Shown: positions 49,161 through 64,000, numbered from the stretch's first letter. The stretch: DNA of 64,000 bases from Monocercomonoides exilis PA203 (GCA_001643675.2 LSRY02000050.1:186001-250000), one strand, 5' to 3'. Numbers and translations: made by a program. The notes: generated from the sequence alone by a model not told the origin.

Positions 49161-49352
49161 ATTATTATTATTATTATTATTATTATTATTATTATTATTA
49201 TTATTATTATTATTATTATTATTATTATTATTATTATTATTATTATTATTATTATTATTATTATTATTATTATTATTATTATTATTATTATTATTATTAT
49301 TATTATTATTATTATTATTATTATTTGTATTATTATTATTATTATTATTATT
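49161..49352 (+). repeat. (ATT)n microsatellite array 1
   Basis: ~64 units with one interruption near 49325; abuts the AGATGAATT terminus at 49353. Confidence 0.97.
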
Positions 49353-52300
49353 AGATGAATTGTGAATAGATTTTTTTCATTTGAATAGATTCAACTTATT
49401 TGAATGAACTGGGTTTTTCTTAAATTACATCATGTTATTTTAAATGGTTGAAGTGACACTTGAATAAAGTGCGATACACTTAAATAAAGTTTTTGTGAAA
49501 AAGTAGTGAACACTTATTATAATATTTTCACGTTTTATCTTTCACTTTATCAACAAAAAAAAATGAAAAATTCGAAAAATCTGAGATTTTTCTGTATTCT
49601 TAATCAATATTTGATATATGTTTAAAGAAGATTTTATTTGACAAAAAGAGAGAGAAATGAATGCAAATATCATTTTGTTATCGTTATTCAATTCCATTCC
49701 TACTTTTTAACTTTTTTTGATCACTGTATAATTAAATATAAAAAACAAAATTTTGTTTTTATTGAAGTTCGTGGAGTGATCTGCATCCAACAAAGCATAT
49801 AATTTCGAAGCTCTCAGTCAAGTCGACAGGTTGAAGCTGCTTTCATCTTTGCAACTTTCTCCATTGACTGGGCATATTTCATTTTCATTGATAGATTTTT
49901 TTTCACAAATTCTTTCAATATTCCGCTTGACTGCATTCTTCCCCGCTTTCCCCCATTGATAGTCTGGCGATTTCTCTGTATTCAACATTCATATGCCTTT
50001 GGATCCTTCTTTATTGTATCATCAACAATCTGTCTCAAATCTTCCGCTTCATTCGAAGCCTTCTTCCAACAAGCAATAAACATAATAAATCCAATCAAAA
50101 GAATCTTAAGAATTATCGATGTCATAACAGTTGCAATCGGTGGTCGAGACAGTTATCTTTCTCTTCTTCCTTCAGTAATTCTTTCATCGTTTTAAATTAG
50201 ACTTCGCTGTTGTTCTTCAAAAGAAATTGTACTGTAGATGCACTGTATTCGAGCATTTTAACATGATGCTTGTGGCCAATTCTGTGGTGTCAGGCACTGA
50301 AGTTACAATTGAGGCTGAGATGACAACATGGATTACAGTTTCATTTTCATTAAGTTCTGCTTGCAACGGATATTTCTGAGTTTGTGAAGGGATTCATTGA
50401 CAAAATCAATCTGGAGGAGCTAGAGCCAAGGAATGAACGAAGAGCCAATGAGATCCAGGGAAAAGACATTGCCTTCTTAACAAGATATCACTGAATTTAG
50501 CTGCGGAATAAAGAACGGGATGCTCTTTCCGAAGCCATTTTTTCCAATGTTCTCAACTGGAAGAAATTCACGTCGAGATGTTCGGAAGAAAGCCATCACC
50601 GACTTTCATGCAATGAATATTCAAAAGGACATGATCAGAGCAGGCGATGTAGTTCCTTATGGATGAATAGCCTACTGCATTTGGGCTGTTGCTAGAAAAC
50701 AGCACAAACTGAATTTGTATGTTTCCTCCAGAGATCGACAGCCTTCACTTGGATGAATTGGAGATTGTGGTGTCTGATATTCTTCCTGAGCAATCCTGAA
50801 GATCAACCATCGATCCGCTCCACTGGCACAGATTTTTGAAACTATCTTCGTATGTTCCATTCTGTTGCACGCCAGCTGCTCCATCAAATCAACATGAAGA
50901 TAAAAAAACATCCGTCAAATCTGCCAACGCTTCAATGCTCCCTTTTTCAGATGTGGAAACACACTTTTTGTTCGAGTAGTTTTCCAATTCCAGCAAAAAA
51001 GATGAAGATGAAACAGCCAAGCAGCACGGGCCAAGCGAATCTTGGGTTATGTTTTGAAATGATGACTGCTTCAAATGGAATGCCGAAGCATTTGATGCAA
51101 CGCTCCCTGCACATCCTTCTCCAAGAATTGTGTTTGAAATAGCCAAGAAATTCATCTGAATATCTGAATCTTGGCATTCTATAGAAAGCAAAGAACCAGA
51201 CTGCACAGATATGGCATCGAATTCCGAATGATAGTATTGGACGTTTGAATGGCCTCCTGAACCGTCTGAGGAAAGCACAATCAAGCTTGCTTTGCTCTCT
51301 GCATTTCTGATTTGAACCTTCTGCAGCTGAGAGTCTTTGCAATTGTAAAGGATAAGGGTGGATTGTTCAAGTGTGCAACTGGAAATTAGCACTTGCTGCG
51401 TTGAAATGTTTACCAGATTGCGGAAGTCCAACAACACAACAGAATTCGCATCAGAATATTCAAGTTCATAAATGAGCAATATAGTCCGCCTCTTGCTCCC
51501 ACGCACGAAGAACTGAGATGAATACAAGTAAAAGTGCACCCGTTTGTTGATAGTCTTCCATTCTCGTGGAGAATGATGGAGCAATTCAATTTGTGTTCGG
51601 TGTTTCCACTCCAATCTTCTTGAACAAATGTTGAATCTGCAATCAACAAGTTGCCATCAGTCAGTGATTACAAACTTGAATGAGAAGAAGAAAAAGCGCT
51701 ACCAAACAAAAACGTGAGAAATTCCATTTTTACTCTCAGCAAGCACGAAACGAGACTGCTCCTCTTGTTTCCAATGCTGATGTTCAGCAGAATAATCCCT
51801 CTTATGCCTTCCACATCCAGCGACTTGATCCAAACATCTCAAGCGCTTGCTTCCCCTGACACCACAGTGCTTTTGCCGATCAGCAAATTGCTGTAAACAA
51901 AAAGAATGATGTGGGGCAGAGCAACATTCAAGGAAATGCACGGTTCGCTCATTGCGCCACGCTGCTGCGAATCGGAGGAGTTGTCGGATGAAGAAGATGC
52001 AAATATAGTCTCGCTCCGATACACAACAACAAGTAGCAGCAGATCTTGTTCATCAGCATAGTCTTGTGCGGTGCATTCCCACATAGCAAACTCCCGAACA
52101 AACGGTGCTCTGAAATCGAGCTGGAACGGTTTGTTGCCAATTTGAATTTTTTTATTCGCTCATTTTTCATATAAGTCTCTTCCAACAAATGCTTTGTTCT
52201 CCATGAATGCGGTGTTTTTAAACAGGAAAGGAAGCAGGCCATCTCTTGTGATCAAAGAACAATCCAGGAATGAAACGCCTCCTCTTCCAGTTGCAGAGCA

Positions 52301-61400: not shown

Positions 61401-62452
61401 GATGAGCAATCCAGGAACATCGCGCCTCCTCTGCCAGTCGCCGAGCAGAAACATCCAGAGATCGAACAAAAGTTGCAGTGGAACAACGAGCCTTCGCTCA
61501 ATTTCATAGCAATGCATCCACCATTCTCACTCAGGATGCTTCCGCTACTCTTGATCGACGTGTTTTAGACAAGCACGCGGGAAGGCTCGCTGCCAGTTCA
61601 GCTGATGATGGAGGGCTCAGATGGTGCACTTAGGAGAAGCGAATAGAGTGTGCTGCATTCAAGATTCACTGCTAGGTCTGCTGCCTTCATTTAATCCCTG
61701 TGACTCGTCTCGCAATTCAGCCTGCGCAAATACTTCTACAATGCTTTTTCCCATCAGTTCCATGTTACCCATTGTAACGTTTGTCAAATCAATGCTTCTT
61801 CCATGTGATACCATCAGAATGTGACTTTTGCACTTGATAAATTGGAACGATCAGAATGATATTTCGCATGCTCCTGATCGGAAGGAAACAACACAATAAG
61901 GAATATCTGCTGGAGAAGTGCAGGCAAATAGCAAGAGAAAAACGGTTGAACTCCGTTCATAATTCAATTAAATAATGAAAACAAATAAGTTTGTTTTTGA
62001 ATCCGTTTTTTATAAAAACCGACACAATTATTTTCTTTTGATTTTTTCCTTTCTTTTGATATTATTTAACCAATATGAGTATAAATGCCAGTTGTTTATG
62101 CCAGTATTGGAGCAATCCAATTTGTTTTATTTGCGCAAATCAAAAATTACTTTTCATTTCATAATTCATGAAATTCTTCTTTTCATCAATTTTAAAAAAT
62201 GTTAAAACGTGTGAATAACATAGTTTGAAGGTTGAACGATTAATGAATGTAATGTTGATATATTTTTAATCGTTTGTTGGTGCAAAAAATTTTGACAGTT
62301 TTTTTAACATTTTGATCCTTATGATCTTTGAAAGAATTTGGCGAAAACAACAAAAATCATTCGCAAAACAGCATTATTATGATTCAAATAATTTATCTAT
62401 GTTTTTGCAATCAATTATACTAACATAAAAAATATTTGTTTATTAAAATATT
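58495..62452 (-). mobile_element. Cassette C: near-identical inverted copy of B, truncated by a later insertion
   Basis: Reverse complement of 54005-57957; ORF pairs mirror each other (e.g. 54253-54483 and 61975-62205). The differences I found are homopolymer lengths. The segment equivalent to 53867-54004 is missing at the right end. Confidence 0.88.
59085..61935 (-). pseudogene. Decayed surface-protein gene (cargo of cassette C)
   Basis: ORF fragments are identical to those of cassette B, on the opposite strand. Confidence 0.75.
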
Positions 62453-64000
62453 AGATGAATTGCACAATTTTTGTGTAATTATGAAATTTTTGAAAAAATT
62501 TGAAATTCGTATATGTTATTTTGAAATAATCGAGTAATTTTGAAATTTTTCGGAAGAATTGAAAATAAGGCAGTTATTTTAAGTTCCACCAACAAATTTC
62601 AAGTTAAAAAAATTGTGGGAAAATCTCAAATTTTTCTCAATTTTTTCCCCTTTTTAATATAACTGAAAGGATGTAAAAATAATAAGTGTTTTATTAATTC
62701 AATTAAAAGAAACATTTATTATTGATTATATTCAACAATTTGTGGATGGAAAAATTTTGTTTCGTTGCCAAAAAAAAGTTCGAAAAATTTTCTTGGAAGA
62801 GTTTGGAAAAACAGGAAGTAACAAGTCACAAACATGTGATGAAAATGTTTAATTTGAGTGTATTTAATGATAACAAAGAAAACCTGACATTACTTCTCAT
62901 GAATTCAGATGACATGTTAAAAAAGCATTCAATGAAAATTTTCAGAAAAAGAAACAATTGAGATAATTAAATAGTATTTCTAGGCATTGGAAAACTGTCA
63001 GTGATTAAAGAATTTGACATTTTTCTTATCAATTTTCTTTCTGAACTGGCTTTTGAGTTGATCTCCTTTATCAATTTTTTTTCCATCTCTTTTCTGATGG
63101 AGTATTCTGTCACTTTTCGATAGAACACTCCATCAGCTGGTTCCAAAGAATTACTGTCAATAACGATGTTGGTTAGCCAACATGCTATTTTTGCATCTGC
63201 ATCAATATTCTGTTTTCCACCTGTATACTTATCCGACAATCTGAGCCATAACTTTTTAAGTCGGCCAAAAAAACCATTCCACTGGGATTCTGAACTTTGC
63301 TAGACTTTTATTGAAATTTTCGATTGACTTTTCCATTCTGCCTTGAGATTGACTTTTGTTGCAAGTGGAAGAAGTCATTGAATTACTTGCATTTGAAGAA
63401 GGAAGAGGAGGGTGTGATGCGCAGGGATGAATTGTATCGTTGTTTGAGCTTGAAGTTATAAAAGACGTGTCCGTGGAATTCTGTGAACATGTGTTCGGAA
63501 CAGGTGAAAAAGCCAAAGAAAAAGAAGAATTGAGAATTGATGAAGGGGATTGAGGAATTGAACTTGTTAACGAAGCGAGATGAACTGAAGATGAAGGAGA
63601 AAAAAGTGAAGAAGAAGAAGGAGATTGATTTTGATTTGTGAAACTTGATTTCGAGAGAGGCAAGAATGCAGACGATGAATTTGATTTGGAAGATGAAGAA
63701 AAAGATTGAGGCATTTCTGACACTGAACATGAGACAGCAGCAGACGATGTGGAAATTTCAGAATTCAAAGAGTTGAACGAAGAATCTGATGAATAAATAA
63801 TCTCCGCAGATTCAAATGAAGTTGAAGATGAAATATCATCAGAGATAGTTGAAGAAGGAGAAGGAGAGCAAGAGGAAGAAGAAGTTTCTAATGAAAATGA
63901 CGAAGCCAAAGAAGGAGAGGAAGAAGAAGATGTGGATGGAGAAGATGAGCTTAACGATGAGTTGCATGGAAAAGAATTGGGAGATGAACATGAAATGAAT
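62453..64000 (-). mobile_element. PIF/Harbinger-ISL2EU (PHIS)-type DNA transposon, element D; runs off the window
   Basis: Begins AGATGAATTG exactly where the C/B identity stops, has AT-rich subterminal repeats and contains the 3' end of a DDE_Tnp_4-type transposase. Confidence 0.8.
62967..64000 (-). CDS. DDE_Tnp_4 (IS5/PIF-Harbinger/ISL2EU-like) transposase, C-terminal part; one-base frameshift in a homopolymer; 5' part outside the window
   Basis: Removing one base from the A7 run at 63267-63273 joins ORFs 63256-63909 and 62967-63239 into ENFNKSLAKFRIPVEWFFGRLKKLWLRLSDKYTGGKQNIDADAKIACWLTN, the FN-x6-R-x2-VE-x2-FG-x-LK...C-x-LxN signature. The frame stays open to the window edge. Confidence 0.78.

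What the first reader, a model, noticed from the sequence alone, without database searches (positions are those of the whole stretch)
49161..64000. Candidate gene-shuttling transposon system: TIR cassettes carrying surface-protein genes, arrayed in (AAT)n tracts beside a cognate Harbinger-type transposase
Seen: layout is (ATT)n - cassette A(-) - (ATT)n - cassette B(+) - (AAT)n - cassette C(-) - element D. Every cassette end reads AGATGAATT(G/T)TGAATAGATT inward and abuts a microsatellite with no spacer. Each cassette holds a decayed host-type type I membrane surface-protein gene and no transposase. D starts with the same AGATGAATTG and encodes a DDE_Tnp_4 transposase. Known: non-autonomous TIR elements are mobilised in trans by transposases that share their termini, and Pack-type elements carry host genes. 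Inference: these are Pack-like PHIS elements that copy a surface-protein family around the genome, which could help explain the expansion of such families in this lineage. I do not know of a description of this system.
Basis: partly seen in the sequence, partly recalled or inferred. Interest (0 to 1): 0.92.

Follow-up and report, generated by a model that had tools for sequence, protein, structure and literature searches.

The report
Gene-carrying Harbinger-type transposons in Monocercomonoides
In the gut protist Monocercomonoides exilis, a dispersed family of 4.1-kb cut-and-paste transposons carries a broken tail piece of the organism's giant surface-receptor genes; gene capture of this kind is known in plants and animals, but I found no description of it in this lineage, and the copies swap sequence patches with one another.

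Summary
The layout is real. The genome is Monocercomonoides exilis. A, B and C are non-autonomous 4.1-kb TIR elements. Copies sit on at least six other contigs, most with precise AG...CT ends and 3-bp ANT duplications (one empty site confirms this). D is the 3' end of a 9-10 kb element whose copies elsewhere encode an intact 769-aa DDE_Tnp_4 transposase. ANT targets and AG/GG ends fit Pangu/Harbinger2-type PHIS; no second ORF was found.

Corrections: C is an exact inverted copy of B and lacks one end. The cargo is a 5'-truncated, dead fragment of the beta-helix receptor family, not a whole gene. D is related but not shown cognate; another family matches the subterminal motifs better. Most copies are not in (AAT)n.

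Added here: the copies are mosaics, including a 136-bp B-to-A conversion patch, and their differences keep a coding-selection signature. Transposase-bearing elements carry receptor fragments too. They multiply pseudogenes, not working genes.

The scan noted the same system on other DNA of this genome before. New variant of Pack-type elements; interest 0.5.

The parts
49149..49352 (.). (ATT)n tract left of cassette A
49353..53467 (-). Cassette A, 4115 bp, complete; R end at 49353, L end at 53467; 96.8% identical to a copy on contig LSRY02000040.1 (L001)
50066..50137 (-). Predicted transmembrane segment of A's cargo, followed by the family's basic juxtamembrane tail (coordinates read from the frame translation)
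   Evidence: 19-aa hydropathy 2.5
50796..50931 (-). 136-bp patch in A that is 100% identical to B (56380-56515) while its flanks are 99.5-100% identical to L001: B-to-A conversion tract, which carries one of B's stop codons
53468..53866 (.). One AAT triplet followed by an (ATT)n tract between the L ends of A and B
53867..57957 (+). Cassette B, 4091 bp, complete; 76% identical to A; imperfect TIRs of about 57 bp with an array of 14-bp palindromes (TTYATTYRAATRAA) inside each end
54534..57420 (+). Cargo of B: 5'-truncated, decayed C-terminal part of a beta-helix single-pass receptor gene (start = first base of homology to the longer gene in L009; 3' limit approximate); at least 8 stops and 4 frameshifts
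57958..58494 (.). (AAT)n spacer between the identical inverted copies B and C; opposite polarity to the two other tracts
58495..62452 (-). Cassette C: inverted copy of B positions 139-4091 with no substitutions; L end missing; last triplet (62450-62452, ATT) is D's target site
62453..64000 (-). Element D, downstream end of a 9-10 kb transposase-bearing PHIS element that runs out of the window; identical to the L011 copy except for one T
62967..64000 (-). 3' part of D's DDE_Tnp_4 transposase gene: Ser-rich insert, catalytic Glu region and C-terminus; the apparent frameshift in the T run at 63267-63273 is absent from read contigs and from other copies, so probably an assembly error
22990..28135 (+). 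Older relative of the D family in the same window (75-78% identical to L010's left part), with receptor-gene cargo, cut off before the transposase by another insertion

Best explanation
A, B and C are members of a dispersed, non-autonomous Pack-type family of a PHIS (PIF/Harbinger-related, IS5-like) lineage with Pangu-like ends. Step 1 (shown): the 4.1-kb unit moves as a whole between AG...CT ends and duplicates an ANT triplet. Step 2 (shown as structure; route inferred): an ancestral element took up the 3' part of a beta-helix surface-receptor gene, probably by template switching during repair of an element-end break; the piece has decayed. Step 3 (inferred): a DDE_Tnp_4 transposase of the same lineage acts in trans. 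D's family is one candidate (14 identical terminal bases, found next to cassettes more than once); a MONOS_4747-like family, which shares the subterminal palindromes, is at least as likely. Step 4 (inferred): an (AAT)n tract offers a target every three bases and tolerates insertions; A and B landed in one tract, B was copied locally in inverted orientation to give C, D's end then joined C at an ATT 138 bp inside the L end, and the spacer between identical inverted B and C flipped (in the cell or in the assembly), which accounts for the mismatched triplets around B. Step 5 (shown for cassette-to-cassette, inferred for gene-to-cassette): ectopic gene conversion keeps patching the copies, so they are mosaics whose shared differences come from sequence that diverged under coding selection. 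Net effect: the family spreads pseudogene fragments of the receptor family and is a substrate for conversion; it does not make new working genes.
For: Full-length copies with exact ends and matching triplets on other contigs: ATT (L001), AGT (L002), AAT (L004, L005). Paralogous empty site with a single ATT, L001 flanks versus L009. Five transposase elements with AG or GG ends and matching ANT triplets: L006, L007, L008, L010, L011. Intact 769-aa transposase with all three acidic residues, PF13359 57.7 bits against cut-off 24.8. D differs from L011 by one base in 1547, so the family moved recently. Cargo matches a longer gene without cassette ends at 75-77% from B position 668, and that gene continues about 590 codons upstream. 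Cargo protein is 43-49% identical to the ectodomain of a 2372-aa PK_Tyr_Ser-Thr protein and falls with beta-helix clusters in the Atlas. Mosaicism: runs of shared polymorphic sites exceed permutation in 20 of 21 pairs; four segment trees reject each other (AU p<0.01); 136-bp directional patch. Shared variants are third-position biased (77 against 47 and 37) while singletons are nearly flat (87, 82, 68); NG86 dN/dS about 0.4.
Against: No transposition assay. The cognate transposase is not identified. D's far end at this locus could not be fetched, so the history of the C|D junction is not closed. The triplets flanking A and B in the window do not match (ATT versus AAT). Only one non-cassette gene of the cargo subfamily was seen (L009), and it is itself interrupted. 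NG86 without a transition correction lowers dN/dS. Tree segments were chosen after looking at the identity profile. My AlphaFold model of the cargo was poor (pLDDT 39), so the fold rests on the Atlas and on homology.
Confidence: 0.8

Rival explanations
1. The elements are an engine of functional surface-protein expansion or an archive of silent cassettes: intact copies, or patches donated from cassettes into expressed receptor genes, diversify the cell surface.
For: Mosaic copies with a coding-selection signature; patches of 94-99% identity between a cassette (L004a) and the non-cassette gene in L009; long open stretches in some copies (374, 418, 554 codons); RNA-run contigs lie on the cargo and not on the ends or D's 3' part (DNA carry-over not excluded); about 31 annotated gene models on about 24 contigs belong to this subfamily.
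Against: All nine cargo sequences examined have stops and frameshifts and lack the 5' part of the gene; several lesions are confirmed by read contigs with no differences. The only conversion with a known direction runs from dead copy to dead copy and moved a stop codon. The selection signature is what flow from intact genes into cassettes would give.
Confidence: 0.12
2. C, and so the B-spacer-C palindrome, is an assembly artefact (nanopore fold-back or misjoin); the real locus is A, B, then D.
For: B and C have no substitutions, only homopolymer indels; the assembly is nanopore-based and its authors note uneven polishing of repeats (PMC8767320); read contigs hold a join of a cassette R end to D's end across six bases that is not in this window (joint 58494/62448, my reading of it).
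Against: A fold-back would have a palindromic centre, but the spacer is all AAT; it would run on into the reverse of B's left flank, not switch to a TIR exactly at an ANT triplet; the same L-end position is broken in an independent locus (L004); contigs identical to B/C have depths (137-252 in X1) like those of D's two identical copies (201) and above junction contigs (32-89), weak evidence for two copies.
Confidence: 0.2
3. The family specifically targets (AAT)n microsatellites, or the tracts grow out of element ends.
For: Every tract of 8 or more units in 321 kb examined touches an element end; a D-family copy found independently (L011) lies inside a tract; both flanks of B read AAT outward.
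Against: Nine of ten intact elements outside the window are in ordinary sequence, one with an AGT duplication; triplet use (AAT 5, ATT 3, AGT 1) follows base composition; L011 has AAT in the same phase on both sides, as expected from insertion into an existing tract and not from outward growth; density of ANT in a tract is only about 3.5 times background, so some extra attraction, local hopping or tolerance is needed but strict targeting is not.
Confidence: 0.15
4. The cassettes are deletion derivatives of an autonomous, cargo-bearing element of the MONOS_4747 (L007) type that lost its transposase and kept its cargo.
For: Cassette L end matches L007's end downstream of the transposase and cassette R end its upstream end (z 14 and 9-11); L007's cargo lies in the matching orientation and is from the same protein family.
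Against: L007's cargo is only 30-38% identical in protein to the cassette cargo and gives no tblastx hit with A or B, so it is a different paralog; L007 ends start GG, the cassette AG.
Confidence: 0.3

Closest known systems
Pangu (= Repbase Harbinger2) group of the PHIS superfamily (Han et al. 2015, PMC4482050; equivalence in PMC12730594; also in Ectocarpus, PMC12477816)
   Same: 3-bp ANT duplication, ends starting AG or GG, short TIRs, DDE_Tnp_4-type transposase
   Different: Pangu autonomous elements average 3.5 kb with two ORFs; these are 5.7-10.1 kb, show one transposase ORF, carry decayed host fragments, and have a 60-240 aa Ser/Pro-rich insert before the catalytic Glu. Pangu was not reported from metamonads. 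Phylogenetic membership not tested.
Pack-PIF and other Pack-TYPE elements of maize and rice (Gisby and Catoni 2022, PMC8903248); Pack-MULEs
   Same: Non-autonomous TIR elements with captured coding fragments, moved in trans, tending to local clusters
   Different: Other lineage and target rule (ANT, not TWA); one large (about 2.9 kb) fragment of a single receptor family; local copies here are inverted, while plant Pack-PIF pairs were mostly in the same orientation; strong mosaicism among copies
Multicopy Pack-TIRs of animals such as Ssk-FB4 (Tan et al. 2021, PMC8277862)
   Same: A captured gene piece amplified by repeated transposition to distant sites
   Different: That paper's main text does not mention PIF or Harbinger; Ssk-FB4 is proposed to be functional, whereas every copy here is broken
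Canonical PIF/Harbinger
   Same: DDE_Tnp_4 transposase, 3-bp duplication, subterminal palindromic motifs (motif role from my own knowledge)
   Different: TWA duplication and Myb/SANT second ORF are both absent here
Silent-cassette archives for surface antigens (trypanosome VSG, Borrelia vls; from my own knowledge)
   Same: Truncated pseudogene copies of a surface-protein family that exchange segments by conversion
   Different: No expression site or flow into expressed genes is shown; here the copies are spread by a transposon

Membership tests
PHIS superfamily | DDE_Tnp_4 (IS5-like) transposase with D, D, E triad in the autonomous partner | tested here: met
   PF13359 above cut-off for P0047 and relatives; weak IS5 NF033581 match; triad conserved
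PHIS superfamily | Terminal inverted repeats and a short AT-rich target duplication | tested here: met
Pangu / Harbinger2 | ANT 3-bp target duplication confirmed by an empty site | tested here: met
   9 of 9 intact elements outside the window; empty site L001 versus L009
Pangu / Harbinger2 | TIRs start AG or GG | tested here: met
   AG in cassettes, D, L006, L008; GG in L007 and the old element at 22990
Pangu / Harbinger2 | TIR length 11-40 bp | tested here: inconclusive
   20-35 bp near-perfect core, imperfect to about 57 bp in cassettes; only 10 bp identical between the two ends of the D family
Pangu / Harbinger2 | Second ORF in most autonomous elements | tested here: not met
   No ORF other than the transposase is shared among L006, L007, L008, L010; remaining ORFs are cargo pieces. 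A spliced, fast-evolving ORF could be missed.
Pangu / Harbinger2 | Transposase falls in the Pangu clade | not testable with these tools
   No reference Pangu, Harbinger or ISL2EU proteins were available by reference; no match in plasmids
PIF/Harbinger sensu stricto | TWA duplication | tested here: not met
   Duplications are ATT, AAT, AGT
PIF/Harbinger sensu stricto | Myb/SANT second ORF | tested here: not met
ISL2EU | 2-bp AT duplication in A|AT|T, GG ends, THAP and YqaJ domains | tested here: not met
   3-bp duplications including AGT and ATT; no THAP or YqaJ hit; only a weak HTH_Tnp_4
Pack-TYPE element | TIRs plus target duplication, no transposase inside | tested here: met
Pack-TYPE element | Internal sequence is a fragment of a host gene that also exists outside the element | tested here: met
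   L009 gene without cassette ends, 75-77% identical and longer at the 5' side; homology to receptor kinase ectodomain. The exact parental locus was not identified.
Pack-TYPE element | Mobilised in trans by an identified autonomous partner | tested here: inconclusive
   D family shares 10-14 terminal bases; L007 family shares the subterminal motif array
Microsatellite-specific transposon | Most insertions lie in the target repeat | tested here: not met
   1 of 10 intact elements outside the window

The most novel reading that the evidence does not exclude
A single-ORF, Pangu-like transposon lineage has spread an archive of truncated receptor-gene cassettes that feed segments back into expressed surface-receptor genes by gene conversion, that is, a transposon-built diversification system for the cell surface of a gut protist.
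Probability: 0.1. Interest if true: 0.85.

Novelty: new variant of a known kind. Interest (0 to 1): 0.5.

Why it matters
The genome paper left 35% of the assembly as unclassified repeats, noted that they overlap tyrosine-kinase genes, and guessed that they are misidentified gene families (PMC8767320). This shows that part of them are transposons carrying dead receptor fragments, so dozens of short 'hypothetical' gene models are cargo and family sizes need recounting. It extends Pack-type capture to an ANT-targeting PHIS lineage in a metamonad, with autonomous elements that seem to lack the usual second ORF and that carry cargo themselves. The mosaic copies make the direction of gene conversion between transposon cargo and the largest receptor family directly testable.

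Tried and rejected
TA duplication with GATG or TTAGATG ends (my first reading of the window): rejected by copies elsewhere, which show 3-bp ANT and AG ends. Pfam on the window's own pieces of D and of the cargo: no hits. AlphaFold on the cargo alignment: pLDDT 39, unusable, so no fold search was run. tblastn of the transposase against plasmids: nothing. tRNA association: no tRNA near any cassette; one tRNA-Gly 1.8 kb from the L011 element, so these copies are not part of the tRNA-anchored stacks noted elsewhere. Exact look-up of ten window ORFs to reach the window's own contig: none on record, so D's far end was not seen; P0047 and P0048 led to other copies. Empty-site search for the L011 tract: no paralog in the loci held. 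D's two reading-frame pieces were searched apart and not joined. A majority consensus of the cargo was used inside a script only to fix the frame and count lesions.
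Full report
Source. Proteins matching cassette A are all from Monocercomonoides exilis, and the loci come from assembly GCA_001643675.2, a nanopore assembly polished with Nanopolish and Pilon (PMC8767320).

Observation. The terminus motif occurs five times exactly, at 49353, 53467, 53867, 57957 and 58495, each touching an (ATT)n or (AAT)n tract. 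A (4115 bp, minus) and B (4091 bp, plus) are complete and 76% identical. C is the reverse complement of B positions 139-4091 with no substitutions and seven single-base homopolymer indels; it lacks the L end and joins D at 62452/62453. So there are five cassette ends, and B and C count as one sequence.

The cassette is a dispersed mobile unit. Seven loci fetched through cargo proteins gave complete copies on four contigs (L001, L002, L004, L005; 4.09-4.13 kb after removing one nested insertion), a copy whose R end is cut by another element (L003), a second partial copy in L004, an older copy with only its R end recognisable (L012), and one gene with no cassette ends (L009). The complete copies are flanked by matching triplets: ATT, AGT, AAT, AAT. 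A paralog of L001's flanks in L009 has one ATT where L001 has the element, which fixes the ends as AG...CT and the duplication as 3 bp. About 31 annotated gene models on about 24 contigs belong to the cargo subfamily, a lower bound set by the length window of that search.

Element D. The window holds the 3' part of a transposase gene on the minus strand. Its last 99 residues find eight proteins, four of them from M. exilis; these pass the DDE_Tnp_4 cut-off. Two near-identical full copies were fetched. L010 is 10.1 kb with an ATT duplication and an intact 769-aa protein (PF13359 57.7 bits; D, D and E present). L011 is 9.1 kb, differs from D by one T in 1547 bases, and has an open frame. That T makes the frameshift in D; read contigs lack it, so it is probably an assembly error. 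Three more transposase families (L006, L007, L008) have AG or GG ends with ATT or AAT duplications. All these proteins have a Ser/Pro-rich insert between the second Asp and the Glu, also seen in unnamed metagenome proteins. ANT duplication and AG/GG ends are the marks of Pangu (PMC4482050), which equals Repbase Harbinger2 (PMC12730594). I found no conserved second ORF, and could not place the protein in a PHIS tree, so I call it Pangu-like and not a member.

Which transposase is the partner. D's family shares 14 terminal bases with the cassette R end at its upstream end and 10 at the end seen here. It also turns up next to cassettes: in this window, in L005 (seven bases from a cassette end) and in a read-contig joint. 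But its subterminal region does not align with the cassette's (z -0.3 to 3.3) and has none of the cassette's 14-bp palindromes. The L007 family has four or five at each end and aligns at z 5-15, although it starts GG. The partner is therefore open.

Cargo. Homology to the L009 gene begins at B position 668; that gene continues about 590 codons upstream. The cargo protein is 43-49% identical to the ectodomain of a 2372-aa protein with a PK_Tyr_Ser-Thr domain, and 31-52% identical in pieces to a neighbour protein with a weak Beta_helix hit and a membrane segment. The Atlas places it with Preaxostyla proteins and right-handed beta-helix clusters. A membrane segment and basic tail are readable in A and six other copies but broken in B and C. 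Tyrosine-kinase-like proteins are the largest family of this genome (PMC6759080). Each copy has 4-8 stops and 2-4 frameshifts in the aligned part. Read contigs without differences span several of C's lesions (59716-59966, 60274-60730), so the decay is real. The transposase-bearing elements carry other decayed pieces of the same broad family. RNA-run contigs lie on the cargo only; this does not prove transcription.

Mosaicism. Identity between copies jumps along their length; for example B and L004a are 94-98% alike over the first 850 bp and 55% near position 3000. Runs of shared polymorphic sites beat permutation in 20 of 21 pairs and four segment trees reject one another (segments chosen after inspection). 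One event has a direction: 136 bp of A equal B exactly, while on both sides A equals L001 at 99.5-100% and B at 65-87%; the patch brought a stop codon with it. A polishing artefact cannot be excluded for this patch, but patches at 94-98% identity elsewhere cannot be explained so. Variants shared between copies are third-position biased and singletons are not; dN/dS is about 0.4 by NG86. The simplest reading is that dead cargo is patched with sequence that diverged in working genes, with neutral decay on top. Patches of up to 99% over 100 columns link L004a and the L009 gene, but their direction is unknown.

Microsatellites. One of ten intact elements outside the window is in a tract (L011, same phase on both sides, as for insertion into an existing tract). 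Yet all long tracts in 321 kb touch element ends. So tracts are favoured landing sites, not required ones. In the window B has ATT on the left and AAT on the right. If the spacer between the identical inverted copies B and C has flipped, all three cassettes sit in one (ATT)n tract with matching triplets, apart from one base at A's L end. This is inference. The L end is broken at nearly the same position (about 137-139) in C and in L004's second copy, just inside the last palindrome, which suggests a hot spot for incoming ends.

Comparison and verdict. Pack-PIF elements are known in maize and rice (PMC8903248) and multicopy Pack-TIRs in animals (PMC8277862). Paper searches found no account of PHIS elements or gene capture in Monocercomonoides; only Merlin is described (PMC8101967). 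Earlier notes of this scan describe the same system on other DNA of this genome; I treat them as leads only. The finding is a new variant of a known kind: real, well supported as a Pack-type PHIS family, weaker on the cognate partner, on microsatellite targeting and on any role in making working surface proteins. Interest 0.5.

Noticed in passing
window 22990-28135: Older D-family relative with a GG end and receptor-gene cargo, interrupted at about 28135 by another repeat family
   Followed up: partly
window 35706-47768 (-): 4020-aa ORF with an N-terminal NT-C2 domain (PF10358), a very long Glu/Lys coiled-coil region and a Ser/Pro-rich tail
   Followed up: partly
window 338-5125 (-): 1596-codon open frame with Peptidase_S41 domains, a family more typical of bacteria
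   Followed up: no
window 29598-31685 (-): Open frame with an Rxt3 domain
   Followed up: no
window 19700-21040 and 10200-11900; L003, L005, L006, L008, L011: Two further gene-like repeats recur at 65-80% identity in many loci, often inside transposons
   Followed up: no
L005 12682-20143: 7.5-kb element nested in a cassette, with ends starting A(A/G)ACCTGTGCGAC and a duplication of about 10 bp; MuDR- or Merlin-like, carries gene pieces
   Followed up: partly
L009 17106-20952 (-): Frames for a ubiquitin-protease-like region joined to a transposase-like region; matches an earlier scan note on a giant Sola2 element. The L001 cassette is inserted in a related repeat
   Followed up: no
L009 3192-3563: Telomere-type (CCCTAA)n run about 3.3 kb inside the contig start, 5 kb from the non-cassette family gene
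   Followed up: no
L005 8707-8736: The cassette's left flank is a short tandem of an 11-bp unit ending in the AAT target
   Followed up: no
P0015, P0016, P0018, P0042, P0043 (ENA metagenome contigs): Unnamed transposases with the same Ser/Pro-rich insert, 35-43% identical; the lineage occurs outside M. exilis, host unknown
   Followed up: no
L010 6-2323: Left part of an L007-family element next to the D-family copy; PHIS elements cluster
   Followed up: no
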